Sequence record: MF459647.1
Strand: one strand, 5' to 3'
Length of the DNA: 64,000 nucleotides
Part shown: piece after piece, positions 1-20,473 of the stretch
How the letters are laid out: the number at the start of each line of letters is the position of its first letter
Numbering within the stretch: position 1 is the stretch's first letter
Position numbers and translations under genes: made by a program
Notes under the pieces: generated by a model
The model's input: only the letters and a program-made list of their open reading frames with translations
Told to the model about the DNA's origin: nothing
Databases searched by the model: none

Positions 1-426
1 TGGTCGGGTTACAGTGATTACAACATCCGTTTGAATCCGCTTATCATCACCGATATTCTGAAACAAACGCGTCTGTTGGTCGGTCAGGACTTCCGAGCAT
101 TCTTGATGGCAAACTACAACCGCGGTATCGGTTCCCAAGCGGGCCTGGTGCGTGAAGTAGTGAACTATCTGTCAGGTCAGGTGGGTTATCGTTCGGTGAA
201 CACCGCGATTGTGATTGAAGAGAACAAAATCAAGTCCTACGACAAGTTCGAAAACTGGGGCGCGAAAACCATCTCGGCTAATCACATGGATACCGTAGGG
301 TTGAGTCAGTTGGATAAAGTCAACGACTACGACTTCTACCGTCTCTGTGCAGGTCTGTCACCGGAACTGCTGGCCCGTATGTTTTTAGTTATCGGCGGGG
401 AGAACATCGATGTCGGACGTAAATGA
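1..426 (+). CDS. Hypothetical protein, 5'-truncated
   Basis: Frame of track ORF 31..426 is open back to base 1. Its stop overlaps the start of the next gene. Confidence 0.7.
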   Translation, partial: WSGYSDYNIRLNPLIITDILKQTRLLVGQDFRAFLMANYNRGIGSQAGLVREVVNYLSGQVGYRSVNTAIVIEENKIKSYDKFENWGAKTISANHMDTVGLSQLDKVNDYDFYRLCAGLSPELLARMFLVIGGENIDVGRK

Positions 427-1705
427 TTTATCCGCGCAGATGGCCGCTATTAACGTTGTGGCCTCTACCGAGCTGGTAGAAAAGGTAAGCGACACGCACG
501 ACCTGGCCCGTCTTCAGAACAAACTGAACGAAAGCCGTAACCGTGCTGAAACCGTTCGTTCGCTGTTGGTGAATACCCAACCGCATGAGCTGACCGTTGA
601 AGCCGCGAACTACATCGACAACCAGCTCAGTTCTATTGGGGCGCTACAGGTGGACGGTACTACCGTTCAGGGCGTGGAGTCACTGGGTTACACCCTGATG
701 CCACGTCAGTTCCTGGAAACGCGCCTGGCGGGCTGTGAGGGCTTCCTGTCGAGCTGGGGTGCTAAGACCACCTTTATTGCTAAGCAAATCGCTGCGGCAT
801 TTAAAGATGCCTGGGTTCTGCTGCGTGAAAGCAACGACAGCCTACTAAGCCGTTTGGATGCGCTGGACAAAGACATACAGCAAGCCGGGACTTTCCCGGA
901 AGGCACCTCTGAGATTCTCATCGGGTTCCGTCTGTATAACCTGTTCCAGATTAATCACGAAGTAAAGGAAGACTGGATTAACCAGTTGAACAAAGTTAGC
1001 AAGACCATCAACGGCCTGTCGTCTAACTACTACGTGATGTCCAAAAACAACCTCAACAGCACGCTGAGCTATTTTGGTGGTTTCCCTAAGTTAGACGAAG
1101 CGAAAGCCACTGAACGCTACCTGATGCTACCTGCGTCGATTCCGAGCGTACGCTTTAAAGAGTGTACTATCGCCGACCGCACGTGGCCGCAGAAAGGCAT
1201 TGCTGCGTTCCGCAGTGTGGAAATGATGGGCGGGCGTTTCTTTATGGATACCCGTACCCTGGACCGTAACCTGTCGCCGAAGATTCCGGAAGACGTTAAC
1301 CAGTACCTGGTTGGGTATTTGGAAAACGACCGGACGTTCTTTAACAACAAGCCTGAGAAAGAGTATAACGATCTCAAAGAAACCGTGAAGACCTTGGGGT
1401 CTGAACAAATCAAACAGATCGTGAAGCTGGCCCGTACCCTGTTAAAAGACTGGGAAAAGGTGTACATCGACGGCGAGAAGCACAAGCTGGTTGATAAAGA
1501 CTACGAAGGCATCATGAAAGAGTTGCTGGACGCAGAGTGGAATGACGACCTGCGTTACTACGTGTTCAACGCCTTTAACGGCCTGGTCACGAAGAACCAG
1601 CAGGAATTGATTGAGCTGCGGGCGAAGGTGAATACCTACCTGGTGTTCTTAATCAACGGCATCATTGAGATTTGCTACACGTCGATTGAACTCAATCAGG
1701 AGTAA
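410..1705 (+). CDS. Head (inner/ejection-type) protein paralog with propeptide
   Basis: GGAG RBS. N-terminal region has QGVE-S and AGCE-GFL motifs. First member of the tandem head-protein array. Confidence 0.65.
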   Translation: MSDVNDLSAQMAAINVVASTELVEKVSDTHDLARLQNKLNESRNRAETVRSLLVNTQPHELTVEAANYIDNQLSSIGALQVDGTTVQGVESLGYTLMPRQFLETRLAGCEGFLSSWGAKTTFIAKQIAAAFKDAWVLLRESNDSLLSRLDALDKDIQQAGTFPEGTSEILIGFRLYNLFQINHEVKEDWINQLNKVSKTINGLSSNYYVMSKNNLNSTLSYFGGFPKLDEAKATERYLMLPASIPSVRFKECTIADRTWPQKGIAAFRSVEMMGGRFFMDTRTLDRNLSPKIPEDVNQYLVGYLENDRTFFNNKPEKEYNDLKETVKTLGSEQIKQIVKLARTLLKDWEKVYIDGEKHKLVDKDYEGIMKELLDAEWNDDLRYYVFNAFNGLVTKNQQELIELRAKVNTYLVFLINGIIEICYTSIELNQE

Positions 1706-1708
1706 GTT

Positions 1709-2749
1709 ATGACGCCGTCTGTGTTGATGTCCTATCGGGCAGGATTAGAAGAACATATCTCGTTACGAGAAAGCCATCAACAACTGATTGAGCTGGGTAA
1801 AATCCTGGACATGGACTTAAGCGCTGTGTCCGGGAATGAGGAGTTTGCAGACGACGCCAAAGAAGCGTTAAAAAGCGGTTTCATCTCGTTAGGTCAAGGT
1901 GTGCTATCCGCTAGTAAGTGGGTTGGGGGTCAAGCACTCGACCTGTTTACGAAAAGCATCTCCTCTGCCGGTTCTCAGTTGATGAAGGTCTTTGAAAGCA
2001 ACGAAGGTCTGATTCGGAAAATCCGAAACGCCGCGTCCGAACCGTCTTACTCGTTTAGTCTCTCCGTGGCACAGGTTGGGAACTTGACCTCAACCGGCCA
2101 CTGGAAAGATTTCGAGCATGACATGGATACGCTGTTGGCTACTCTGGAATCCACGTGGAAACACAGCAAGGATGTAAACGAGTATCTCAATAAACAGTTG
2201 GTGTGTGCCCGTAAACTGAAAGGTGCCAAAAGTAACGACGTTTTATTAAAGGTGATGGATGAGTTCGATGACATCACCTATCCCAAATGGAACCTTCCGG
2301 AACGCAATGGAAATACTATGTTGCTTTCTGACGTCTTACCGGAAGGTAAAGTCTTTAAATGTAATTACGACGCAAATGCCGGTAAAGTAGAATATTCTAT
2401 GTCCGGTGATAAACCTGCGGGCGAAAGCAGTGATATTGAATTGTCTAAATCTGAACTGGGTACTATCCTCAGCAAACTGGACAAGGTCAATGCGTTGCAT
2501 AAAGCCATGAAGCAAGCCTACGACAGTTATCTGAGCTTTATCAAAGACTGGGGGTCTATGGTTAAATCCGTGGATTCTGGTCTCGGTGAAGCAGAGGGAC
2601 TGAGTGGACATGTGGTTGGGGAAGCTGAAAAGCTGTTGGGTGGTGATGCCAAGGCATTATCATTCTATAGCGGGTTTTGCCCACGAGTGGTCAACTACAC
2701 TGACAAGTACATTCATGGTGTGCTTGGTGTACTCGCTAAAGTAATTTAA
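1709..2749 (+). CDS. Head (inner/ejection-type) protein paralog
   Basis: AGLE-E and SGNE-EF motifs in the first 50 aa, then an amphipathic helix. Lies within the array. Confidence 0.6.
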   Translation: MTPSVLMSYRAGLEEHISLRESHQQLIELGKILDMDLSAVSGNEEFADDAKEALKSGFISLGQGVLSASKWVGGQALDLFTKSISSAGSQLMKVFESNEGLIRKIRNAASEPSYSFSLSVAQVGNLTSTGHWKDFEHDMDTLLATLESTWKHSKDVNEYLNKQLVCARKLKGAKSNDVLLKVMDEFDDITYPKWNLPERNGNTMLLSDVLPEGKVFKCNYDANAGKVEYSMSGDKPAGESSDIELSKSELGTILSKLDKVNALHKAMKQAYDSYLSFIKDWGSMVKSVDSGLGEAEGLSGHVVGEAEKLLGGDAKALSFYSGFCPRVVNYTDKYIHGVLGVLAKVI

Positions 2750-2785
2750 TTAAATTCACTTTTGAAATTTCAAAGGAACAAGAAC

Positions 2786-4033
2786 ATGTCTTTAGATCTT
2801 CTGAATATGTACAAAGGCGCTGAAGAGCTGGACCTGGAAAACCAGGTTACTGAAACGGCTGAAGACGTTGCTGAAGAAGTGGCTCGCGCTGAAGTGGCTG
2901 AAGCGACTGTTGAGATCCAGGAGCAGGGTGAGCAAGTTGCCCAGCTGGTTGAAACTGTTCAAGACCTGGAAGAGCAGGTTGAAGAGCTGGAAGAAACCGT
3001 TGAAGGTCTGGAAGGCCTGCTGCGCTCTGGTAACTTCAACGCCGGCGCATTCGCGAACATGTACAACCGTGCTGCAAAACTGTCTGCCAATCTCGGCGGC
3101 CGTGCAACTGCGCGTATGGGTGCAGAATCTTTCTCTGACGCAGCGACCGCTCAGGTAATGGCGCGCGACGGCATGGAAGGTTTCATGGATAAAGTCAAGG
3201 GCTGGGGTAAAACCGCCATTGAATTCATCAAAAACATCTTCAACGCCGTGATCTCTTTCTTCGTCGGTATCTTCAACAAAGTTGAAGGCCTGCAGCGTCG
3301 CCACGATGCGCTGGTTAAGCGTGTTGATGCCGCTGAGAAAGTGAAAGACAAAATCAAGCTGGGCGGCTGGAACGTTTGGATCGACTACGAGAAAAACGGC
3401 GCGTCTGAATCTAAAGCTAACAAGCTGGGCGACGCAGTTACCAAACTGGTTGCTTACTGCGACGTAGCTAAGAAAGTTGAAAGCGCTAACATCGGTGCAT
3501 TCAACTCTGCGTACACCGCCCTGGTTAACGCGCTGAAATCTGGCACTTCTGGCGGTAAAGAAGTGAAAGAAGGCAGCAAGAAGAAAGTGATGCAAGAAAT
3601 CGGCGGTATCCGCGTTCTGTTCACTTACGAAGCTGAATCTGTTGATAAAGCAGAAGACGCTCCGAAAGCTGCTAAAGCGCTGAAACTGATGGTTGGTAAA
3701 GCGCCGGAAGCCAAGAAACTGACTACCGGTGAAGTTGCTGCTAAAGCTGACAAATCTGCGCTGAAAACCGCGCTGGGTGAAGTTGCTGGTTCTATCTCTG
3801 GTCTGCGTCAGGGCAAAGCCGATCGTGCATTCTCTGCTGCTGAGCGCGACCGCGTGATCGCTTCTCTGAACACCGTGAAAGCGGCTAACGACGAAGAAGC
3901 GAAAGAGCGTAAAGGTCAGGTTGCAATCGTGCGTGCCGTTTACTCTTCTGGCGCAAGCATCCTGAAAACTCTGGCTCAGGCCGAAACCAGCGCCGCTGAT
4001 GCTCTGCTGAGCTGCGTAGCTGCACACGTGTAA
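2786..4033 (+). CDS. Abundant head/inner-body protein (phiKZ gp93-type ejection family)
   Basis: AAGGA RBS before ATG 2786. Very acidic coiled-coil propeptide with KGAE, EGLE, MGAE and DGME-GF motifs. Ala/Lys-rich mature part. Strong high-expression codon bias. Followed by a terminator. Confidence 0.75.
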   Translation: MSLDLLNMYKGAEELDLENQVTETAEDVAEEVARAEVAEATVEIQEQGEQVAQLVETVQDLEEQVEELEETVEGLEGLLRSGNFNAGAFANMYNRAAKLSANLGGRATARMGAESFSDAATAQVMARDGMEGFMDKVKGWGKTAIEFIKNIFNAVISFFVGIFNKVEGLQRRHDALVKRVDAAEKVKDKIKLGGWNVWIDYEKNGASESKANKLGDAVTKLVAYCDVAKKVESANIGAFNSAYTALVNALKSGTSGGKEVKEGSKKKVMQEIGGIRVLFTYEAESVDKAEDAPKAAKALKLMVGKAPEAKKLTTGEVAAKADKSALKTALGEVAGSISGLRQGKADRAFSAAERDRVIASLNTVKAANDEEAKERKGQVAIVRAVYSSGASILKTLAQAETSAADALLSCVAAHV

Positions 4034-4062
4034 GTAATCCCGCCGGGATTGTTACTATAACA

Positions 4063-4094
4063 GGCCAGGTGAGCGAAAGCTCACCTGGTCTTTT
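4063..4094 (+). terminator. Intrinsic terminator, 12-bp stem, GAAA tetraloop, U-tract
   Basis: GGCCAGGTGAGC-GAAA-GCTCACCTGGTC-TTTT downstream of the stop at 4033. Confidence 0.85.
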
Positions 4095-4122
4095 ATATGC
4101 CTATTTTTATTTCGAGGTTTTT

Positions 4123-5223
4123 ATGTATCCGACAGTGGTGGATGAAAAGCTTGTCCTTAGCCCAACCACAGCACAGTCCTATGAGAGTGCACCGGATGGC
4201 TATGATGCGATGTTGTCTGATGAAACCGAGACGGCGTTACGTAAAGAGAAGGAAACCCGTAAGGATGACGTAGACGGGTCTGAGTCTCTCTATCACAGTT
4301 TATCACGCTTAGTGTTACCGAAACCTTCTCTGGAGACCGTCGAGGGCTCAGAGGGCGTTCTGGGGACAATTAAAGGTGGTCTGTCTCGTTTGTGGAAATG
4401 GCTTAAGGAATTCCTGGGCTGGTTACGCAACATGATCTTTGGTCGTAAGGCACGGGTCAATCGTCAAGTTGAGGATTTGGCACAGCTGATTAAAACCGGT
4501 ACGCTGAAACCCAAAGCCGTGTACCCGCACTCTATTGTTCCGTTGTGCCCTATTCAACGGGGTAAGCTGGGGGAGGTCCCGGGCAACCTGGAATGGTTGA
4601 AAGCGGAACAGAAACGCGTTCACGATTTTGTGAATACCGCTAAGGTCATTGTGAAGACCGCGGCTAAACAACTCAAGGAATGGGAACCGCTCTTCCGTAA
4701 AGTAGCTGACGGTAAAGAGGTGGATCTGGCTGCGTTCACGAAACCGGCGGTGTTAGGAGTCGCACTCTGGGGACCCCTTAAGTTACCGATTAAGCAACAG
4801 GACCCATACGACGAAATCCTGCATTACGAAGGTGCTATCTTTGGGTCGTATGAAGCCAATATCTCCGTCGTTGGGAATGCGATGGTATTTAGTGTCTCCA
4901 AGTATAACGGTTACACGGGTAAACAAGAGTTCTCTACTTCCCCCAGTACGGCAAAAGATATCTTCACGGAAAACGAAAGCCTGGGTAGCGCACTGGACAG
5001 TTTAAGCAGTGAGTGTGAAGACACCCTGAAGTCGGCTATCAAAGTGCTGGAGCGTGCTATTAACAGTATCCCCATGCAGTCCCGTGTTGGTCAGATAAAA
5101 GAAGCGACCCGTTTCATCAATTCTTATATTTCTGTGGTGAGTCGTTTCATGTCTTACTCAACGATTGATGTGCTGAAGATTCAAGAGTATATCAACCGTA
5201 CCTTGTTGTCTGCTTATAAATAA
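4123..5223 (+). CDS. Head protein paralog
   Basis: GAGG RBS before ATG 4123. DGSE-SL and EGSE-GVLGTIKGGLSRLWKWLKEFLGWLRNMIFG match the array motif. Confidence 0.65.
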   Translation: MYPTVVDEKLVLSPTTAQSYESAPDGYDAMLSDETETALRKEKETRKDDVDGSESLYHSLSRLVLPKPSLETVEGSEGVLGTIKGGLSRLWKWLKEFLGWLRNMIFGRKARVNRQVEDLAQLIKTGTLKPKAVYPHSIVPLCPIQRGKLGEVPGNLEWLKAEQKRVHDFVNTAKVIVKTAAKQLKEWEPLFRKVADGKEVDLAAFTKPAVLGVALWGPLKLPIKQQDPYDEILHYEGAIFGSYEANISVVGNAMVFSVSKYNGYTGKQEFSTSPSTAKDIFTENESLGSALDSLSSECEDTLKSAIKVLERAINSIPMQSRVGQIKEATRFINSYISVVSRFMSYSTIDVLKIQEYINRTLLSAYK

Positions 5224-5232
5224 GGAGGTCAC

Positions 5233-5727
5233 ATGCGTGTGGCTATCATGAATACCGCGGCAATCATCAATAACACGTTGAGCGCCGATAAACAGGAAGG
5301 GTTTAACCCCAACCTGTTATCACTGATGAACGTCAGTGAGAAGCTGTTCAAAATCGAATCGCCTTCTACTAATACCCATGCGCTGTTGGTAGAGAAGATT
5401 GATTTGGGAGAGCTGTTCTGCAATACCCCTATCGATTTACGTGGTCTGACTTTCACCGATTCCCCGGCAGTTGATTTGACGGGATGGACCCAGTCTCTGA
5501 ACGTCGATATCTTCCAAAACCTGCCTAAGTTGGATAACGAAGAGTGGGAGTATATTGCGGATGAAGATGTGTTAGGTAAGCATTTCTTAAACGCAATTCG
5601 TCTTACTGGTTTGGTTACCTTATCTCGCACTGAAGTATCGTTGTCTGTGTTGGATAACGTCATGACGATTGAGGCCGACAACGCCATGCTGTACAAGGGA
5701 AAGGTAGACGTTCTGCTGCCTGAATAA
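5233..5727 (+). CDS. Hypothetical, probably virion-associated
   Basis: AGGAGG RBS. Terminal motif ADNAMLYKGKVDV resembles that of 9222..9947. Confidence 0.6.
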   Translation: MRVAIMNTAAIINNTLSADKQEGFNPNLLSLMNVSEKLFKIESPSTNTHALLVEKIDLGELFCNTPIDLRGLTFTDSPAVDLTGWTQSLNVDIFQNLPKLDNEEWEYIADEDVLGKHFLNAIRLTGLVTLSRTEVSLSVLDNVMTIEADNAMLYKGKVDVLLPE

Positions 5728-5798
5728 TCTTATGTTTGTTGTATCCTTGGCCAAGGATATTTATCTTTTATCAACAATAAAAACCACGGGAATTTAAG

Positions 5799-6704
5799 AT
5801 GGACGAGACCATTGACAATTTTGATGTAATCGAAGATGCACCTATTGAAGCAGAGTTTGCAGGCGAACATGCCGAAACGCTGGTTGATGGGATGCTCGAT
5901 ACCATCCAGGGGAACGAATCTTTCCACGGCGGCCTGACTCGCGCTCAGGAATACCTGAAAGCTGTAATGGAAACAGACGGCGTAAGCTTCTACGCAGTTC
6001 ATGGCACTGAAGGTGTGATGGACAAAATTAAAGCTGGCGCACAGAAAGCCTGGGAAGCAATTAAACGGGCGTTTAAAGCTATCTGGTCTTTCTTCTTCGA
6101 TAAGAAGATTGAACGCCAGGCGAAGACTATCTTCGATACTGCAAAAGAGTATCGTCAGACTGCTGAAGAAAAGATGAAAGGTTATAAAGGCGACGTTAAC
6201 GCCGAAGCGCTGAAAAAGCGCATGACCATGATCGAAAACGTCGAGAAAATGCTCGACGAGAAATCTGACGCGGCGACAAAGAAAGCGCTGGAAGAAATGC
6301 CGAAAGATTTCGCGATTCACAAGCCGTATGTCGACATGATGAAAGACGCGGCAAAAGAAATCCGTGAAACCTACGGTCTGATGGATATCATCAAAGCGAT
6401 CCACAAACCGGCCGACGTCTCTACTGCGGTAACCAAACTGGAAGAAGTAGCGAACAAAATCGTTAAGCACCAGGAAAAGGTTCGCAATGTGAAGAGTCAG
6501 ATCGACTCTGCGCTTAATGAAATGGAACGCGCTGCGGCTGCTCCGTCGCCGGATAAGAAACATATCGAAGGTAACCTGAAGATTCTGAAGTGCTGCGCTG
6601 CGATCTTCCAGGACTACATCACTGCTATCCAGAAGAAGATGAACCTGGTCAGTAAGCTGATGAGCTCCATCGACCGCCTGTTTGCTAAACCTGCTCAAGC
6701 TTAA
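5799..6704 (+). CDS. Head protein paralog (helical, K/A/E-rich)
   Basis: QGNE-SF and HGTE-GVMDKIKAGAQKAWEAIKRAFKAIWSFFF. Propeptide shared with the next two genes. Confidence 0.7.
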   Translation: MDETIDNFDVIEDAPIEAEFAGEHAETLVDGMLDTIQGNESFHGGLTRAQEYLKAVMETDGVSFYAVHGTEGVMDKIKAGAQKAWEAIKRAFKAIWSFFFDKKIERQAKTIFDTAKEYRQTAEEKMKGYKGDVNAEALKKRMTMIENVEKMLDEKSDAATKKALEEMPKDFAIHKPYVDMMKDAAKEIRETYGLMDIIKAIHKPADVSTAVTKLEEVANKIVKHQEKVRNVKSQIDSALNEMERAAAAPSPDKKHIEGNLKILKCCAAIFQDYITAIQKKMNLVSKLMSSIDRLFAKPAQA

Positions 6705-6714
6705 GGAAAAGACA

Positions 6715-7788
6715 ATGTCTGAGATTGTAGTTGAAACGATTGAAGAAATCGAAGCAGCACACCCTCTGGTTGATTTCAGCCCGGAACTGGAAGCGGTATC
6801 CGAACATGCTGAAACTGTTATCCAGGGGACACTGGATACCCTGGACGGTACCGAAGGTTACGGCCTGACCGATGCTCAACGTTATCTGAATTCCGTGCTT
6901 TATGCCGCGGGTGAAGTTCCGGCTCACGTTGCCGGTAACGAAGGTGTGTTGTCTACCATTAAAGGTTGGGCGACCAAAGCTATCGACGCGATTAAGCGCG
7001 CGTTTAAAGCGATCTGGGATTACCTGTTCGGTAAGAAAGACGTAGAAGAAGAAGTTAAGCTGCTGCGTAATGACGTGAAGGTCACTGTTGAAAAGGTTAA
7101 CACCTTTAAGCAGAAAGCCAAGTCATCTTCTGAAGGCACTTCCGGTAACGTCGTTATCGCACTGGCCAACAACTACTCTCGTGCTGCGAGCGAAGTGAAA
7201 GCCACTGATCCGGCGTTGGCTAAGCAGTACGAAACTGCGGCCGAACAGCTGAAAGAAAACCCGGTTATCACCAGCATGTCCGACAAACGCATTGTGCTGG
7301 ACGAAAAGCTTTATAAGAAAATTAAAGCTATCGCCGCTGCCGCCGATGCGCATGTTAAGAAATGCACAGATGATTTCCTGGATCTTCGTGGTGAAATCCA
7401 CGATCAGGCTAACCTGTCTGAAATCAGTGTTTCTCTGTCGCCTAAATCTCTGCATAAGCTGATGAGCTCGGTCGACGGTATCCATGGTGTTGATGACATC
7501 ACCAAAGCGCTGTCGTCCCTTGACGCTGAAATTTCTGGTTGGGCACTCAACAACACCCTGACGTCCATGAAACGTATTCGCACTAAAGTCGAAGCGAAGA
7601 TCAAACGCTTCGAAAGTGAGATGAGCTCTCAGGACGCACAGGAGCAGAAAGCCATGCGTAACGATATTGGCGATTTCCAGCTGATTGTTCGTATGTGTAA
7701 AACGGTGATCAGTCGTATGGAAGCTCAGCTCAACGCAGCTAAACGCATCGCAAAAATGCTGCCGAAGTTACATCGTCTGCCTGCGTAA
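6715..7788 (+). CDS. Head protein paralog
   Basis: AAGGA RBS before ATG 6715. DGTE-GY and AGNE-GVLSTIKGWATKAIDAIKRAFKAIWDYLFG. Confidence 0.7.
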   Translation: MSEIVVETIEEIEAAHPLVDFSPELEAVSEHAETVIQGTLDTLDGTEGYGLTDAQRYLNSVLYAAGEVPAHVAGNEGVLSTIKGWATKAIDAIKRAFKAIWDYLFGKKDVEEEVKLLRNDVKVTVEKVNTFKQKAKSSSEGTSGNVVIALANNYSRAASEVKATDPALAKQYETAAEQLKENPVITSMSDKRIVLDEKLYKKIKAIAAAADAHVKKCTDDFLDLRGEIHDQANLSEISVSLSPKSLHKLMSSVDGIHGVDDITKALSSLDAEISGWALNNTLTSMKRIRTKVEAKIKRFESEMSSQDAQEQKAMRNDIGDFQLIVRMCKTVISRMEAQLNAAKRIAKMLPKLHRLPA

Positions 7789-7797
7789 GGAGGGACA

Positions 7798-9225
7798 ATG
7801 TCCACTGCAAAAGACTTGCACCTGTTAAGTCTTCTGTATGGGGCTCCCGCCGAACAAATCGAAGAAATCCTCACAGGCTCTGGGTGCGCTGCGCTCAGAG
7901 CCGCTTTACAGGAACAAGACCTGTTAGATTTGTTAGCGGCTCCCCGTGAAGATTTGTGCAAAGCCATTCGTTCTATTCTCAAGCTGTATCTCGAGCGGTC
8001 ACAAGACCATCGGTATGAGCAAATGAGTGTGAGCGAACCTGTGGGGGCGTTACTGGAAGAAATCCGTACCGCAACCAATAACGTCAACGACCCACCTTTA
8101 CCGAGTCTGCAAACAGTTGCCCGTGGCCTCATCGGTCAAGGTAAGCTGCCTAATGATTCTGAAAGCACACGTCCGGTCGAAGAACTGATCGACGTGCTGC
8201 AGAAATTCATTAACTGGGGATTAGATACCGTAAGTGATGAAGCTGTACAGAGTCCTTACCCGCTTCCTCGGTTAGTGCACGTTATTGTGTTTTTGGATGA
8301 CGTCATGGTGATGTTGAACACCTATCTTACGTGTAAAGACAACCCTGATTATTCAGAAACCGAACTGATAAAAGAGAGTTTACCCATGAGTGAAACTATT
8401 CTGCTGGATCTGCCGGATGATGCATACGGCAACGTAGAAGAACAACTCGACCACGCCACCACCATTGTGGACGGTATGGAAGGTTTCCTGTTAAACGACT
8501 CGCCACGCGACCTGAGCTATGCTCAGCAGTACGTACACGGCGTGCTGTATGCCAACGGTGCTATTCCGCAGATGCGTGAAGGTAACGAAGGCAAGATCAT
8601 GGACACCATCAAGAAGTCTGCCCAGAAAGTATGGGACACCTTGATGAGCGCCCTGAAAGCCATCAAAGATTTCTTCTTCGGTAAAGCCGATAAAGAAACC
8701 CAACAGGCTGCCCTGGCCATCGCTGATAAAAACAAAGCGACCCTAAGTGCCACTGACGACAAAAGTGCCGAAATCAAAGACACCGCGAAAGCCGGCCTGT
8801 TGAAACTGGCAGAAGCGTCTGATGAAAGCGGCGAGTTCAAGGCTGCAGCAGAAGGTCTGAACACCGTGTCTGATGCACCGTCTACGCTGGACAAGCTGAA
8901 GAACCTGATGAACAAACAGGTCTCTTCCGGCGGTAACCTGCGTAAGCTGTACGAAGCAGCAGAGAAAAAGGTGCAGGACCTGAAAGCCCTTATCTCTAAA
9001 GCCGACAGTGTGGCTGACGACGATAAAGAAGGCGCGGCAGCAGCGAAGCAAGAGCTGCAGGCTGGCATGACCGAAGCCAAAGAAGCGCTGACCGAAGCGA
9101 AGAAAGAAATGGGCCTCCACAAGAAGTTCATGAACGGTCTTCGCAAAGCCATGATCAACATCACCATGGCCATCTTCATGCACGGCAAGAACGTCGCTGA
9201 AGAAGTGAAAGAGGCGAACGCATGA
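7798..9225 (+). CDS. Head protein paralog with an extra N-terminal domain (possible internal start at 8386)
   Basis: AAGGAGG RBS. From M197 onward it aligns with the two preceding paralogs (DGME-GF, LSYAQQYV, EGNE-GKIMDTIKK). Confidence 0.65.
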   Translation: MSTAKDLHLLSLLYGAPAEQIEEILTGSGCAALRAALQEQDLLDLLAAPREDLCKAIRSILKLYLERSQDHRYEQMSVSEPVGALLEEIRTATNNVNDPPLPSLQTVARGLIGQGKLPNDSESTRPVEELIDVLQKFINWGLDTVSDEAVQSPYPLPRLVHVIVFLDDVMVMLNTYLTCKDNPDYSETELIKESLPMSETILLDLPDDAYGNVEEQLDHATTIVDGMEGFLLNDSPRDLSYAQQYVHGVLYANGAIPQMREGNEGKIMDTIKKSAQKVWDTLMSALKAIKDFFFGKADKETQQAALAIADKNKATLSATDDKSAEIKDTAKAGLLKLAEASDESGEFKAAAEGLNTVSDAPSTLDKLKNLMNKQVSSGGNLRKLYEAAEKKVQDLKALISKADSVADDDKEGAAAAKQELQAGMTEAKEALTEAKKEMGLHKKFMNGLRKAMINITMAIFMHGKNVAEEVKEANA

Positions 9226-9947
9226 AAAATATCCACCCCCGTGTCGTAGAGTTGTTGTCCAAGCAATTGCCGGCAACCGCACAAATTACGGGGGCAGTTT
9301 CGGTATCGGAAACTGAGTCGACCATCCTGGTGAAAATCAGTGGGGTAAAGAACCAGTTTAACTTACCGAAAACGGATATTGGAAATCGCTACCCGCATCG
9401 TGCCACTACCCTCACGGTTAGTCGGATGTGTACCTATCGTGACGCTATTCAAAAGCTGAGCGATCGTGACCGTCTGTTCCTGCTTGGGGGTGTGGATTAC
9501 GACAACGCTACCACACGTTTAGAGTTTGATGAAAACGGCAGGGGCGAAATTGCCCTGGCAATCTTGGACGACAGCATCATCTACACCGGAGCCATTAAGG
9601 TTAACCTGGTGTTAGCAGAGAAAGCGCTGACAACCAATGCCGAGCCGTTTACCTTACCATTAAGCTATGAGCGTGTAGCCCTGGCGTTAGTCCGTAAGGT
9701 GTTTACGGTAAAAGGCAATGTCTTTACCGGTAATCAACTCACCAAAGCATTTTGTCAAGCAGTTGTGTCGCACCTGACCTCATTCGGCTTTCCTTTATAC
9801 AAGGATGCGCTGGAACAGATGCAGCAGGGTGAAGTGCTTTCGGTTCACAACGACGGCGTTAGCGATATTCTCACGCTCCGTACTCTGAGTGGGATTTGTT
9901 ACCTGATACGGTTCAAAACTCACGCTGAGGATGCTCCGGTATTGTAA
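9222..9947 (+). CDS. Hypothetical, probably virion-associated
   Basis: ATGA overlap with the previous gene. Contains a DSIIYTGAIKV motif. Confidence 0.6.
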   Translation: MKNIHPRVVELLSKQLPATAQITGAVSVSETESTILVKISGVKNQFNLPKTDIGNRYPHRATTLTVSRMCTYRDAIQKLSDRDRLFLLGGVDYDNATTRLEFDENGRGEIALAILDDSIIYTGAIKVNLVLAEKALTTNAEPFTLPLSYERVALALVRKVFTVKGNVFTGNQLTKAFCQAVVSHLTSFGFPLYKDALEQMQQGEVLSVHNDGVSDILTLRTLSGICYLIRFKTHAEDAPVL

Positions 9948-18289: not shown

Positions 18290-20473
18290 ATGGCTAAACT
18301 TATTACCGGTAAAGTGAATGGCGGAGCTAACCTCTTCCACGCTATTCGCTCCTCTCTTTCTCAGGGAACTCTGGGCACCATCCAGGGCACTGAAGGTTAC
18401 GGTAGCTTCGCTTCTGCACTGGATATGGTTTCCGGTCAAGAAGGCGCTGCGCTGAAATCTCAACTGTCCCAACTGAACGCGTCTAACTTCGACGCTTTCG
18501 CAGGCGCACTGCGCCGTAAAGGTACTCCGGCGAGTACTGAAGTCGAATTCCGTGATGCAATCGCTAACTTTAGCGCGCTGGCCGGTAACGAAGGCTTCTC
18601 TCTGCAGAACGAAAAAGGTTCCGAGCAGGACATCAAAGCTGTCAACCTGACTCTGAACGCCCAATCTCACCGTCAGACTGCCGCCGCTGAAGCGCTGTTC
18701 AAAACCATCACCGTTAACTACGAAGACGATGGCGCTGAGCTGGTTGTTCGTGCTGCTGGTCTGGGTAACTACGTTTACGGCGCGTCTGCATGGCAGTCCG
18801 CTTCTGAGCTGCGTCCGATCTTCGGTCTGCTGCGTACCGGCGAAATGTTCAAAGATGAAGTCCTGGCTCTGTATCCGGTCTACCCGACTGATGCCAACGA
18901 CGACAACCGCGAGCTGTTCGCTGAAGCTTCCTTCACTCCGGTGAAAGACGCAACCTATCCGCAGGGTGATGCCTACGGCCGCCAGGGTCACAAAACCCAG
19001 CAGCTGAAAGTGCCGGTTGTGGTTCCTAACCTGCTGGGTCTGTGCCAGGCTCCGGGTCAGCGCGCGTGGACTTCCACCGACGAGATCGAATCTAACTCCA
19101 TCACTGTACGTCAGGTTGGCGTGACTGCGAAAATCGGCGCTGCCGGTAGCACCACCGATGCTAACTTCTTCATCAACACCGGCTCCATGTCCAACAACAC
19201 CTTCGGTCCGCTGTCCACTGGTCAGTCTTCCGACGATCGTGGTCTGAACGCTCACATCCGTGATCTGCCAGCCTTCTCTGTTGTTGACAAAGACGGTAAC
19301 CCGGTTGGCGAAACTCTGTTCGCAGACTGGAAAGCTGCTGGGTACGAGCCGATGCTGACTCTGACCCTGGGCGGTAACTTCCAGCGCCAGACCAACGAAC
19401 TGCGTCTGAACCCGGGTTCTGTGACCATCACCGCTCTGCGTGATATCCCGACCGGTAACGTCATCAGCATCGGTAAAGCCGACGCGACTACCAAGCCGCT
19501 GTTCAAACGTCTGACCGCGGGTGTTGTAGCTTCTGCACTCCTGACCTTCAACGTCAGCAACACCTCTAACGGCAACTTCGGTTACCGCATCGAAGTTTAC
19601 GATGCGCGTAAACACCTGTCCGTTCGCCGTCGCTCTCCGGTATCTGTTAAGTACCCGGTCAGCAAAGATGACGTCAACTCTGAATCCCTGGATTACGCAA
19701 TCCAGCAGATGTCTGTTGTCATCAACAACCAGTGCTCCAAAGACGCGTTCGATGAAGCTGAAAAGCACCTCGAGTACATCACCAGCATCAACAACACGCC
19801 GGTCGTAGGTAACCACCAGGGTTCCAACATCCTGCCTGGCCAGCATTTCGTCACTGCAACTGCCGTTAATCGTAAGCTGAAACTGGCTGACGTAGTTTCT
19901 GCTGTTGGCAACAACGAAATCTTCGATGCGGTTTGTGCAGCTATCATCAACGAAGTGGCAGACATCACTGCTGCGCTGAACACCAAATCCGGCCTGGCAG
20001 CGATTTCCGAATACGGCAACGTTGACAAACTGGACTGGACCGTGGTCACTCACCAGAACCTGGCTCGTTTCTTCATCCGTTCTGGCGACGCGCGCACCAT
20101 CGGTGGTTGGGATTCCATCAAAGTTGAAGCGACTAACTTCGACTCCATGATCGGTAAAATCCTGATCGTTCCGCGTAACACCTCCAACGACGATTCCATC
20201 AACCCGCTCGGCGGCATTGGTGTGAACATCTCTAAAGAGAACATCGTTGTTCAGGGTAACGTGACTCGTGACCAGCAGGACTTCGGCGTCGTGATGACCA
20301 TGCCGACCTACCGCCACTGGCCAATCTGCCCGGTAATCGGTTCTCTGATTATCGAAGATGCCGATAAACTGCTGACCGACGAAGGTCTGATTTCTCAGCT
20401 GGCTAAACTGCGCGTGCAGGTTGCTAACGCTGCTGACATCGGCACCGGTGCAGGTACTGACCCAAACGCTTAA
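18290..20473 (+). CDS. Major capsid protein precursor
   Basis: 727 aa with extreme high-expression codon bias and AAGGA RBS. Propeptide carries GTE/GQE/GNE motifs. Size and position between dnaB and the RNAP gene match phiKZ gp120 / SPN3US gp75. Confidence 0.85.
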   Translation: MAKLITGKVNGGANLFHAIRSSLSQGTLGTIQGTEGYGSFASALDMVSGQEGAALKSQLSQLNASNFDAFAGALRRKGTPASTEVEFRDAIANFSALAGNEGFSLQNEKGSEQDIKAVNLTLNAQSHRQTAAAEALFKTITVNYEDDGAELVVRAAGLGNYVYGASAWQSASELRPIFGLLRTGEMFKDEVLALYPVYPTDANDDNRELFAEASFTPVKDATYPQGDAYGRQGHKTQQLKVPVVVPNLLGLCQAPGQRAWTSTDEIESNSITVRQVGVTAKIGAAGSTTDANFFINTGSMSNNTFGPLSTGQSSDDRGLNAHIRDLPAFSVVDKDGNPVGETLFADWKAAGYEPMLTLTLGGNFQRQTNELRLNPGSVTITALRDIPTGNVISIGKADATTKPLFKRLTAGVVASALLTFNVSNTSNGNFGYRIEVYDARKHLSVRRRSPVSVKYPVSKDDVNSESLDYAIQQMSVVINNQCSKDAFDEAEKHLEYITSINNTPVVGNHQGSNILPGQHFVTATAVNRKLKLADVVSAVGNNEIFDAVCAAIINEVADITAALNTKSGLAAISEYGNVDKLDWTVVTHQNLARFFIRSGDARTIGGWDSIKVEATNFDSMIGKILIVPRNTSNDDSINPLGGIGVNISKENIVVQGNVTRDQQDFGVVMTMPTYRHWPICPVIGSLIIEDADKLLTDEGLISQLAKLRVQVANAADIGTGAGTDPNA

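What the first reader, a model, noticed from the sequence alone, without database searches (positions are those of the whole stretch)
2786..9225. Amphipathic W/F-rich helix unmasked by the last cleavage site in five head paralogs
Seen: right after the last G-x-E, five proteins continue with a basic amphipathic helix ending in aromatic residues: GFMDKVKGWGKTAIEFIKNIFNAVISFF, GVLGTIKGGLSRLWKWLKEFLGWLRNMIFG, GVMDKIKAGAQKAWEAIKRAFKAIWSFFF, GVLSTIKGWATKAIDAIKRAFKAIWDYLFG and GKIMDTIKKSAQKVWDTLMSALKAIKDFFFG. The rest of the mature sequences have diverged. The helix resembles membrane-active cationic peptides and follows an acidic propeptide. Inference: a protease-armed membrane anchor that may act during ejection or formation of the early membrane-bound infection compartment.
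Basis: partly seen in the sequence, partly recalled or inferred. Interest (0 to 1): 0.65.

Follow-up and report, generated by a model that had tools for sequence, protein, structure and literature searches.

The report
Protease-exposed amphipathic helix, phage head proteins
A jumbo phage of the fire-blight bacterium packs its head with a family of proteins that, once trimmed by the head protease, all begin with the same greasy-on-one-side, positively charged helix. That helix could be the still-unknown handle by which these injected proteins grip the membrane vesicle formed at infection, but this is untested.

Summary
The window is Erwinia jumbo phage Joad (Chimalliviridae).

The feature is wider than reported:
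- gp66 also has it, gp67 keeps only the cut site, and gp59 (outside the window) carries it too.
- All 150 best family representatives from a 1.8-billion-protein search have G-x-E followed by this helix.
- It is the only stretch that still aligns between the gp71/72 and gp68/66 clades.
- It is usually the most amphipathic window of its protein, about five-fold enriched in F/W/Y, and follows an always-acidic propeptide.

Cleavage is inferred. Joad has a prohead-protease homologue, and mapped sites in SPN3US gp53/gp54/gp47 and phiKZ gp86 are each followed by a comparable W/F-rich or transmembrane helix.

The genes are phiKZ-type internal head/ejection proteins (PF12699), a known family with known processing.

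The membrane-anchor idea fits the physical chemistry and the published link between this family and the early infection vesicle. It remains untested. The paper on phiKZ gp86 indicates the equivalent helix lies in a capsid-bound helical bundle in the virion.

This scan noted the same feature before in Aeromonas phage D3 (s1-159875).

Verdict: real, family-wide, function open.

The parts
410..1705 (+). gp66, PF12699 internal head protein paralog. Junction G-C-E110|G. Weaker copy of the helix at nt 740-826.
   Evidence: Pfam PF12699 198.7 bits. Module HMM E 2.6e-16. Hydrophobic moment 0.38, rank 61/404. Wimley-White rank 2/403.
1709..2749 (+). gp67, PF12699 paralog. Junction S-N-E99|G kept, helix degenerate (nt 2006-2092).
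   Evidence: Pfam PF12699 38.8 bits. Alignment A1 keeps the E-G column. No module HMM hit.
2786..4033 (+). gp68, the most abundant internal head protein. Candidate cuts at G-L-E76 and G-M-E131.
   Evidence: Pfam PF12699 171.3 bits, phrog_5750. Second most abundant protein in RisingSun lysate MS (PMC6034870).
3179..3265 (+). Post-junction amphipathic helix of gp68.
   Evidence: Hydrophobic moment 0.58, rank 2/388, charge +2, F/W/Y 21% against 4%.
4123..5223 (+). gp69 paralog (annotated GTG start at 4069; orthologs start at ATG 4123). Candidate cuts at G-S-E54 and G-S-E77.
   Evidence: PF12699 21.0 bits, below the 27-bit cut-off, with the match starting at the junction. Ortholog lengths.
4354..4440 (+). 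Post-junction amphipathic helix of gp69 (three Trp).
   Evidence: Hydrophobic moment 0.64, rank 1/339, charge +4. Wimley-White sum -4.6 kcal/mol, rank 1/338.
5233..5727 (+). gp70, a 164-aa ORF without the module that interrupts the array. Not part of the family.
   Evidence: phrog_27462 only. No HMM hit. Present at the same place in three related phages.
5799..6704 (+). gp71 paralog. Candidate cuts at G-N-E40 and G-T-E71.
   Evidence: AlphaFold2 model pLDDT 74, pTM 0.69. Both sites lie in loops between helices, the second in a stretch with pLDDT under 50. Helix at 73-100.
6012..6098 (+). Post-junction amphipathic helix of gp71.
   Evidence: Hydrophobic moment 0.57, rank 1/274, charge +4. Of the eight AF2 helices measured it has the most aromatics (6), the highest moment and the lowest Wimley-White sum.
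6715..7788 (+). gp72 paralog (annotated TTG start at 6682; orthologs start at ATG 6715). Candidate cuts at G-T-E47 and G-N-E76.
   Evidence: Orthologs are 347-357 aa. Alignment A1.
6943..7029 (+). Post-junction amphipathic helix of gp72.
   Evidence: Hydrophobic moment 0.58, rank 1/330, charge +3.
7798..9225 (+). gp73 paralog with a roughly 200-residue N-terminal extension. Candidate cuts at G-M-E228 and G-N-E264.
   Evidence: Alignment A1. Propeptide charge -26.
8590..8676 (+). Post-junction amphipathic helix of gp73.
   Evidence: Hydrophobic moment 0.58, rank 2/448, charge +3. Sub-threshold Pfam PF08102 match over 16 residues.

Best explanation
Shown or well supported:
- gp66-gp73 (except gp70) are tandem paralogs of the phiKZ-type internal head/ejection proteins.
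- They share one conserved N-terminal module: an acidic propeptide of two short helices, two G-x-E sites in the loops between helices, and a roughly 29-residue helix that starts with Gly.
- The helix has a 180-degree hydrophobic face. Aliphatic residues sit in its middle and F/W/Y at its edges. Lysines flank that face and acidic residues sit at the centre of the polar face.

Inferred by homology:
- The propeptide brings the precursor into the prohead.
- The S80-type prohead protease cuts after the Glu.
- The mature, mostly basic protein therefore begins with this helix.

Inferred, most likely mechanism (two states):
- In the DNA-filled head the hydrophobic face is sequestered by protein contacts, within the protein's own helical bundle or between copies, as the phiKZ gp86 structure suggests. 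The lysine face is then free to meet DNA.
- When the proteins are unfolded, pushed through the tail and released at the inner membrane, the freed helix lies in the membrane interface. This keeps the injected protein mass on the luminal face of the early infection (EPI) vesicle.

Identity of the genes and reality of the module: about 0.9. The full two-state mechanism including membrane binding: about 0.45.
For: Identity:
- Window is 100% identical to Joad. Genus is in Chimalliviridae.
- PF12699 passes threshold for gp66, 67 and 68.
- Gene order matches SPN3US gp48-54 and phiKZ gp87-97.
- MS detection in RisingSun.

Module:
- The E-G column is invariant in all 7 paralogs.
- The same module is present in phage EL, Aeromonas PS1 and Klebsiella phiKp_32.
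- The search found 446 clusters at E<=0.001. All 150 best carry G-x-E plus the helix.
- In those 150, P1' is Gly in 82% and Ser in 17%, and the propeptide is always acidic (median charge -10).
- The helix is the top hydrophobic-moment window of its protein in 78% and in the top 3 in 94%.
- Aromatics are 22% in the helix against 4.6% elsewhere.

Cleavage:
- Protease homologue in Joad (E 1.2e-11).
- Mapped sites in SPN3US gp53 (E125), gp54 (E124) and gp47 (E111), and phiKZ gp86 (S-Q-E), each precede a W/F-rich amphipathic or transmembrane helix.
- In the gp71 model both sites lie in loops between helices.

Membrane step:
- Helical-wheel layout of the 150 representatives, and a median Wimley-White interfacial sum of -2.3 kcal/mol against +7 to +11 for average windows of the Joad paralogs.
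- SPN3US gp47 has a full transmembrane helix at the equivalent place, and its authors proposed membrane interaction.
- phiKZ gp93 co-purifies with membrane proteins and co-localises with lipid-dye puncta.
- Goslar gp58 stays with the vesicle after the DNA has left.
Against: - No experiment shows lipid binding for any member.
- Residue-level conservation (F2, I6, G9, I17, I24, F28 at 69-86% identical, 95-99% hydrophobic at the five non-Gly positions) across otherwise unalignable proteins suggests a specific protein partner rather than lipid.
- The gp71 AlphaFold model has pTM 0.69 and whole-model bundle matches starting near residue 10. This indicates the helix is packed in one bundle together with the propeptide helices.
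- For phiKZ gp86 the paper says the modelled part starts near its cut site and forms a helix bundle on the inner capsid face. Goslar gp65 carries the same motif at residues 118-153 and is a vertex-complex protein.
- Helices inserted into the luminal leaflet would oppose, not promote, inward budding. A curvature-driving role therefore has the wrong sign.
- Several phiKZ PF12699 genes tolerate transposon insertions, although redundancy could explain that.
Confidence: 0.45

Rival explanations
1. Purely an assembly and fold element. The helix is helix 1 of the mature helical bundle. Together with the propeptide it forms the common recognition unit for prohead incorporation and for docking of the prohead protease. 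It has no role at membranes.
For: - The module is conserved as one block spanning both sides of the cut.
- Conservation is at the level of residues.
- It is the only stretch shared between clades, as expected if all paralogs must fit one partner.
- SPN3US gp243 is needed to load both PF12699 paralogs into the prohead.
- P1'/P2' are also Gly/Ser plus a hydrophobic residue at the first cut site.
- The gp86 post-cut region is modelled in a capsid-bound bundle.
- The AF2 model is a compact bundle.
Against: - A 180-degree hydrophobic arc with about 7 aromatics at its edges is more than I would expect bundle packing to need.
- The polar face is also conserved in charge type.
- At the same position SPN3US gp47 has a true transmembrane segment.
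- The family is injected and stays with the vesicle.
Confidence: 0.35
2. A DNA-condensing or inner-body polymerisation helix. The lysine face binds packaged DNA and the hydrophobic face glues copies together into the internal protein mass of the head.
For: - Mature gp68, 69, 71 and 72 are net basic (+9 to +13 including the helix) once the acidic propeptide is removed.
- phiKZ gp93 co-pellets with phage DNA after capsid disruption.
- PF12699 proteins are present in hundreds to thousands of copies per head.
Against: - Goslar gp58 stays with the vesicle rather than following the DNA into the phage nucleus.
- Mature gp66, gp67 and gp73 are not basic.
- No ordered inner body was seen in the Goslar reconstructions, nor in a recent asymmetric phiKZ virion map cited there.
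Confidence: 0.12
3. An antimicrobial-peptide-like pore former. The freed helices permeabilise a membrane, either the host inner membrane at entry or the EPI vesicle to let nucleotides in and mRNA out.
For: - Cationic, Trp/Phe-rich, highly amphipathic.
- Sub-threshold Pfam match of gp73 residues 265-280 to a scorpion antimicrobial peptide family.
- How transcripts and nucleotides cross the vesicle membrane is an open question.
Against: - The Pfam match is 18.2 bits against a 25-bit cut-off and covers only 16 residues.
- The helix is tethered to a 200-400-residue protein rather than released as a peptide.
- No leakage data exist.
- Uncontrolled pores would expose the DNA that the vesicle protects.
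Confidence: 0.05

Closest known systems
phiKZ inner-body / ejection proteins gp92-97, gp162, gp163 (Pfam PF12699); Goslar gp53-58; SPN3US gp53 and gp54
   Same: - Same gene neighbourhood.
- All-helical, high copy number in the head.
- Acidic N-terminal part removed at S/A/G-x-E by the prohead protease.
- In phiKZ gp93, gp95 and gp96 the most amphipathic 28-residue window starts within about 8 residues of such a site.
- In SPN3US gp53 and gp54 a W/F-rich helix follows the mapped maturation site directly (gp53) or after about 13 basic residues (gp54).
   Different: - The Joad/EL/Aeromonas/Vibrio-type members have a far more stereotyped, aromatic-rich helix starting with Gly-Phe. phiKZ gp93 has none of the W/F.
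- Joad gp71-73 fall below Pfam detection.
- Seven paralogs here against two in SPN3US.
phiKZ gp86 / Goslar gp65 / SPN3US gp47 (Pfam PF25617, vertex-binding or essential ejection protein)
   Same: - The same junction plus W/F-rich helix directly after the mapped cut.
- The N-terminal module weakly matches PF12699.
- Joad gp59 is the positional equivalent and carries the module.
   Different: - gp86 and gp65 are seen fixed under the capsid vertex, with the modelled gp86 bundle starting near the cut site.
- In SPN3US gp47 the helix has become a full predicted transmembrane segment.
- The C-terminal domains are different.
Adenovirus protein VI (from my own knowledge, not tested here)
   Same: - An internal capsid protein whose N-terminal propeptide binds the inner face of the major capsid protein.
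- The viral maturation protease cuts it.
- The mature protein then starts with an amphipathic helix that attacks a membrane when released at entry.
- phiKZ gp93 likewise leaves its N-terminal piece wedged under the capsid.
   Different: - No sequence or fold relationship.
- It lyses an endosome rather than associating with a vesicle made from the host inner membrane.
- Membrane activity is proven for protein VI and unproven here.
T4 internal proteins with capsid-targeting sequences
   Same: Small N-terminal targeting peptide removed after Glu by the prohead protease. The proteins are injected with the DNA (background in PMC5694885).
   Different: T4 propeptides are 10-20 residues long. No conserved amphipathic helix at the new N-terminus is described in that paper's account.
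Class I viral fusion peptides such as influenza HA2 (from memory, a lead only)
   Same: Cleavage creates a new N-terminal Gly followed by hydrophobic and aromatic residues.
   Different: Fusion peptides are shorter, Gly-rich and largely uncharged. There is no homology, and the comparison was not tested.

Membership tests
PF12699 phiKZ-like internal head proteins | Pfam HMM match above the gathering score (27 bits) | tested here: inconclusive
   gp66 198.7, gp68 171.3 and gp67 38.8 bits pass. gp69 reaches 21.0 bits and fails. gp71, gp72 and gp73 have no hit. These are tied to the family only through the junction plus helix (hhalign 92.6%) and weak PHROG cross-hits.
PF12699 phiKZ-like internal head proteins | Location in the conserved head-gene block downstream of the gp89-91 equivalents | tested here: met
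   Joad gp61(-) gp62(-) gp63 gp64 gp65 followed by the array mirrors SPN3US gp48-54 and phiKZ gp87-97 in order, strand and size.
PF12699 phiKZ-like internal head proteins | Virion-associated, abundant | not testable with these tools
   Published MS of RisingSun lysate detected gp68 (rank 2 after the capsid protein), gp72, gp73, gp71 and gp66 (PMC6034870). That was a crude lysate of the 95%-identical sister phage, not purified Joad virions.
PF12699 phiKZ-like internal head proteins | N-terminal processing by the S80-type prohead protease at S/A/G-x-E | not testable with these tools
   The motif is present in all seven paralogs (G-x-E in six, S-N-E in gp67) and in 150/150 relatives. A protease homologue is present. 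Mapped sites in relatives have the same motif followed by a comparable helix. No N-terminal peptide data exist for Joad or RisingSun; the paper's supplements hold none.
PF12699 phiKZ-like internal head proteins | All-alpha elongated helical bundle | tested here: met
   gp71 AlphaFold2 model: nine helices, pLDDT 74, pTM 0.69. Only generic helical-bundle matches, Z up to 9.4. The gp68 model was too poor to use (pLDDT 48).
Cationic antimicrobial peptides (e.g. Pfam PF08102) | Family HMM match above threshold | tested here: not met
   Only gp73 matched, at 18.2 bits against a 25-bit cut-off, over 16 residues.
Protease-unmasked viral membrane-active peptides (adenovirus protein VI type, a functional class) | Amphipathic helix at the N-terminus created by the maturation protease in an internal capsid protein | tested here: inconclusive
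   The helix and its position are confirmed. Cleavage is inferred by homology only.
Protease-unmasked viral membrane-active peptides (adenovirus protein VI type, a functional class) | Demonstrated membrane binding or lysis | not testable with these tools
   Needs liposome or cell assays. Computed interfacial free energies are favourable but prove nothing.

The most novel reading that the evidence does not exclude
The Gly-started W/F helix is the membrane-interaction element of the whole PF12699/PF25617 superfamily. Hundreds to thousands of copies are delivered through the tail. They coat the luminal face of the nascent EPI vesicle, tether the DNA-protein cargo to it, and possibly make it selectively leaky for nucleotides and transcripts. 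That would give the first molecular function to the most abundant injected proteins of nucleus-forming phages. It would also be a bacteriophage counterpart of adenovirus protein VI.
Probability: 0.2. Interest if true: 0.8.

Novelty: new member of a known kind. Interest (0 to 1): 0.5.

Why it matters
[quoted passage not shown] How the early infection vesicle is built and how it exchanges material also remains open.

This analysis isolates one short, extremely conserved, protease-exposed element that all these proteins share while everything else drifts. That gives experimenters a precise handle. It can be mutated, synthesised or swapped to separate the packaging role of the proteins from any membrane role.

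I found no paper in the searchable library that describes this helix. The idea of a membrane-interacting mature N-terminus was raised in 2017, but only for SPN3US gp47.

Tried and rejected
- Complex prediction (helix 72-102 against the rest of gp71) was unavailable. I have no test of whether the helix docks on its own bundle.
- The tools return no model coordinates, so burial of the helix in the gp71 model could not be measured.
- The gp68 fold was unusable (pLDDT 48).
- Foldseek against the PDB gave nothing at E<=0.001. VIA-align gave only generic helical bundles (designed bundles, BAR domains, pore-toxin and apolipoprotein-like folds) at Z<=9.4, below the noise level for helical proteins. 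I do not count these as evidence.
- PDB sequence searches gave only weak hits. Those to Goslar gp65 and phiKZ gp93 are visually convincing but not statistically significant.
- The search for related loci failed with the full-length alignment and found only 6 loci with the module.
- Word-based protein searches found only close relatives, so the exhaustive search was used.
- Thomas et al. 2012 (PMC3323674) is not held. phiKZ cleavage sites are therefore quoted second-hand from PMC5694885 and PMC11297242.
The Joad record was searched by handle instead.
- Sequencing-read tools were not used because they cannot show proteolysis.
- Rejected: membrane curvature generation by helix wedging as the driver of vesicle budding. 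The helices would sit in the concave leaflet, which gives the wrong sign.

Full report
WHAT THE WINDOW IS

The stretch 2700-9300 is 100% identical to Erwinia phage vB_EamM_Joad and 94.7% identical to its sister phage RisingSun. The genus Risingsunvirus belongs to the Chimalliviridae, the nucleus-forming jumbo phages.

The finding covers gp68, gp69, gp70, gp71, gp72 and gp73. No code other than table 11 was needed.

OBSERVATION

All five peptides stand in the ORF translations directly after a G-x-E.

- The 28 residues after the junction have a hydrophobic moment of 0.57-0.64. That ranks 1st or 2nd among all windows of the same protein, and at most 1 of 2000 shuffles reaches it.
- The helices carry +2 to +4. 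The propeptides carry -9 to -26.
- F/W/Y make up 7-21% of the helix against 3-9% of the rest; gp73 is the low case at 7% against 3%.
- An HMM of junction plus helix finds only these genes and gp66 in all six frames of the window.

Three corrections apply:

- The array has seven paralogs. gp66 has a weaker copy, and gp67 keeps the junction but has lost the helix.
- gp68 and gp69 each have one further G-x-E downstream.
- Cleavage in Joad itself is not shown.

HOW FAR IT REACHES

An eighth Joad protein carries the same module: gp59, outside the window and the positional equivalent of phiKZ gp86. Its junction is G-G-E91|G-F-V, and the helix there is again the most amphipathic window of the protein.

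tblastn with gp71 or gp68 reaches distant phages (EL, Aeromonas, Vibrio, Klebsiella). For most of the distant records only the stretch around the junction matches. Alignments with EL gp165, PS1 gp85 and phiKp_32 gp046 show the module intact.

A profile-profile comparison of the gp71/72 clade with the gp68/66 clade aligns 38 columns only, exactly junction plus helix (92.6%).

The exhaustive profile search found 446 clusters. Among the best 150, which share less than 50% identity with each other:

- all have Gly at P3 and Glu at P1;
- P1' is Gly in 82% and Ser in 17%;
- the propeptide is always acidic (median charge -10, median length 64);
- the helix is the top hydrophobic-moment window in 78% and in the top three in 94%;
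- aromatic content is 22% against 4.6% elsewhere.

IS IT CUT THERE?

- Joad encodes a homologue of the SPN3US prohead protease gp245 (E 1.2e-11).
- In SPN3US the mapped maturation sites of the two PF12699 paralogs (after E125 and E124) and of gp47 (after E111) are followed by, respectively, two W/F-rich amphipathic helices and a predicted transmembrane helix (PMC5694885; sequences read).
- phiKZ gp86 is cut at S-Q-E, and the next residues form a W/F-rich helix.
- In phiKZ gp93, gp95 and gp96 the most amphipathic window of the protein starts within about 8 residues of an S/A/G-x-E site.
- In the AlphaFold2 model of gp71 (pLDDT 74, pTM 0.69) both G-x-E sites lie in loops between helices. The second loop (residues 65-74) has pLDDT under 50. 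The helix spans 73-100.

Cleavage at the junction is therefore likely but inferred. The RisingSun paper gives no N-terminal peptides.

ANATOMY OF THE HELIX

On a helical wheel built from the 150 representatives:

- The hydrophobic arc spans about 60-240 degrees.
- Ile, Val and Ala sit in its middle, and F/W/Y are concentrated at both edges.
- Lysines occupy the flanks, and Asp/Glu sit at the centre of the polar face.
- Oppositely charged residues are spaced i to i+3/4 along the helix.

This is the layout I know from class-A amphipathic helices and interfacial peptides (my knowledge, not a test).

The Wimley-White interfacial sum is -2.3 kcal/mol at the family median, and -4.6 to +4.7 in Joad. 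Average windows of the Joad paralogs score +7 to +11. The helix is therefore physically competent to bind a membrane surface. The same features could also serve a large protein interface.

WHAT THE PROTEINS ARE

- gp66, gp67 and gp68 pass Pfam PF12699. gp69 falls just below the cut-off. gp71-73 are not detected.
- The gene order matches the internal-head clusters of SPN3US and phiKZ.
- RisingSun gp68 is the second most abundant protein in lysate MS, and gp66, 71, 72 and 73 were also detected.

From the literature:

- PF12699 proteins are present in hundreds to thousands of copies per head and are injected with the DNA. Their role is called a key unsolved mystery.
- phiKZ gp93 leaves its N-terminal piece bound under the capsid, while the helix-rich part is freed by the protease.
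- Injected gp93 co-purifies with membrane and lipid-metabolism proteins and co-localises with lipid-dye puncta.
- Goslar gp58 stays with the vesicle after the genome has moved to the phage nucleus.
- Single phiKZ paralogs tolerate insertions.

MECHANISM

I commit to a two-state reading (confidence about 0.45).

1. The propeptide loads the precursor into the prohead.
2. The protease cuts after Glu.
3. In the filled head the hydrophobic face is covered by protein contacts, while the lysine face can meet DNA.
4. After passage through the tail the freed helix lies in the interface of the inner-membrane-derived vesicle and keeps the protein cargo there.

Steps 1-2 rest on homology. Step 3 rests on the gp86 structure paper and the compact AF2 model. 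Step 4 is inference.

Main rival (0.35): the helix is only a fold and recognition element shared by all paralogs. This fits its residue-level conservation, its conservation as one block with the propeptide, and the dependence of SPN3US gp53/54 loading on gp243.

Lesser rivals are a DNA-binding or self-assembly helix (0.12) and an antimicrobial-peptide-like pore former (0.05). The Pfam match to a scorpion peptide family is sub-threshold.

I reject curvature generation by wedging, because the helices would sit in the concave, luminal leaflet.

COMPARISON AND NOVELTY

The genes are new members of a known family with known processing.

The specific element appears undescribed in the papers I could search. 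That element is a Gly-started, aromatic-edged, cationic helix that is the single conserved part of the PF12699 and PF25617 proteins. The closest published statement is the 2017 speculation that the transmembrane N-terminus of mature SPN3US gp47 meets the host membrane.

Functionally the nearest analogue I know is adenovirus protein VI (from memory, no homology).

This scan had already noted the same feature in Aeromonas phage D3 (s1-159875) and in another seven-member array (s1-415253). My results agree with that follow-up and add four things:

- the family-wide statistics;
- the link to mapped cleavage sites;
- the gp86/gp65/gp59 connection;
- the helical-wheel layout.

LIMITS

- No coordinates were available to measure burial.
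- The complex predictor was unavailable.
- The gp68 model failed.
- Fold searches were uninformative.
- The original phiKZ proteolysis paper is not held.

Noticed in passing
window 4069-4122 and 6682-6714: The annotated starts of gp69 (GTG 4069) and gp72 (TTG 6682) are probably too far upstream. Orthologs in three related phages begin at the ATGs at 4123 and 6715, and ortholog lengths are 366-370 and 347-357 aa.
   Followed up: partly
outside the window: MF459647.1 53610-55148 (L021:3111-4649): Joad gp59, the positional equivalent of phiKZ gp86, SPN3US gp47 and Goslar gp65, carries the same G-x-E plus Gly-Phe amphipathic helix module (junction after E91). So the module links the PF12699 and PF25617 families.
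   Followed up: partly
window 5233-5727: gp70, a 164-aa ORF with no module and no family other than phrog_27462, sits inside the paralog array. It is kept at the same spot and the same length in three related phages. Function unknown.
   Followed up: no
L013 (Logan SRR19636044 contig, 232.8 kb); P0002, P0012, P0018: RisingSun-like phage genomes of about 232 kb, with the whole paralog array at 47-85% protein identity, are deposited under Salmonella enterica assemblies and occur in a food metagenome. This suggests relatives that infect Salmonella or travel with it.
   Followed up: no
window 18290-20473 (gp83, major capsid protein): The cut-site part of the module HMM gives a weak match (E 0.89) at about residues 97-104 of the capsid protein. 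This is a possible maturation site of the capsid protein.
   Followed up: no
window 7798-8400: gp73 has an extra N-terminal region of roughly 200 residues ahead of the shared module (total propeptide charge -26). The other paralogs lack it.
   Followed up: no
L019 (phiKZ gp93, gp95, gp96): In phiKZ the most amphipathic 28-residue window of gp93, gp95 and gp96 also starts within about 8 residues of an S/A/G-x-E site (E156, E260, E65), but without the aromatic residues. The W/F-rich version marks the EL/RisingSun/Aeromonas/Vibrio-type members.
   Followed up: partly
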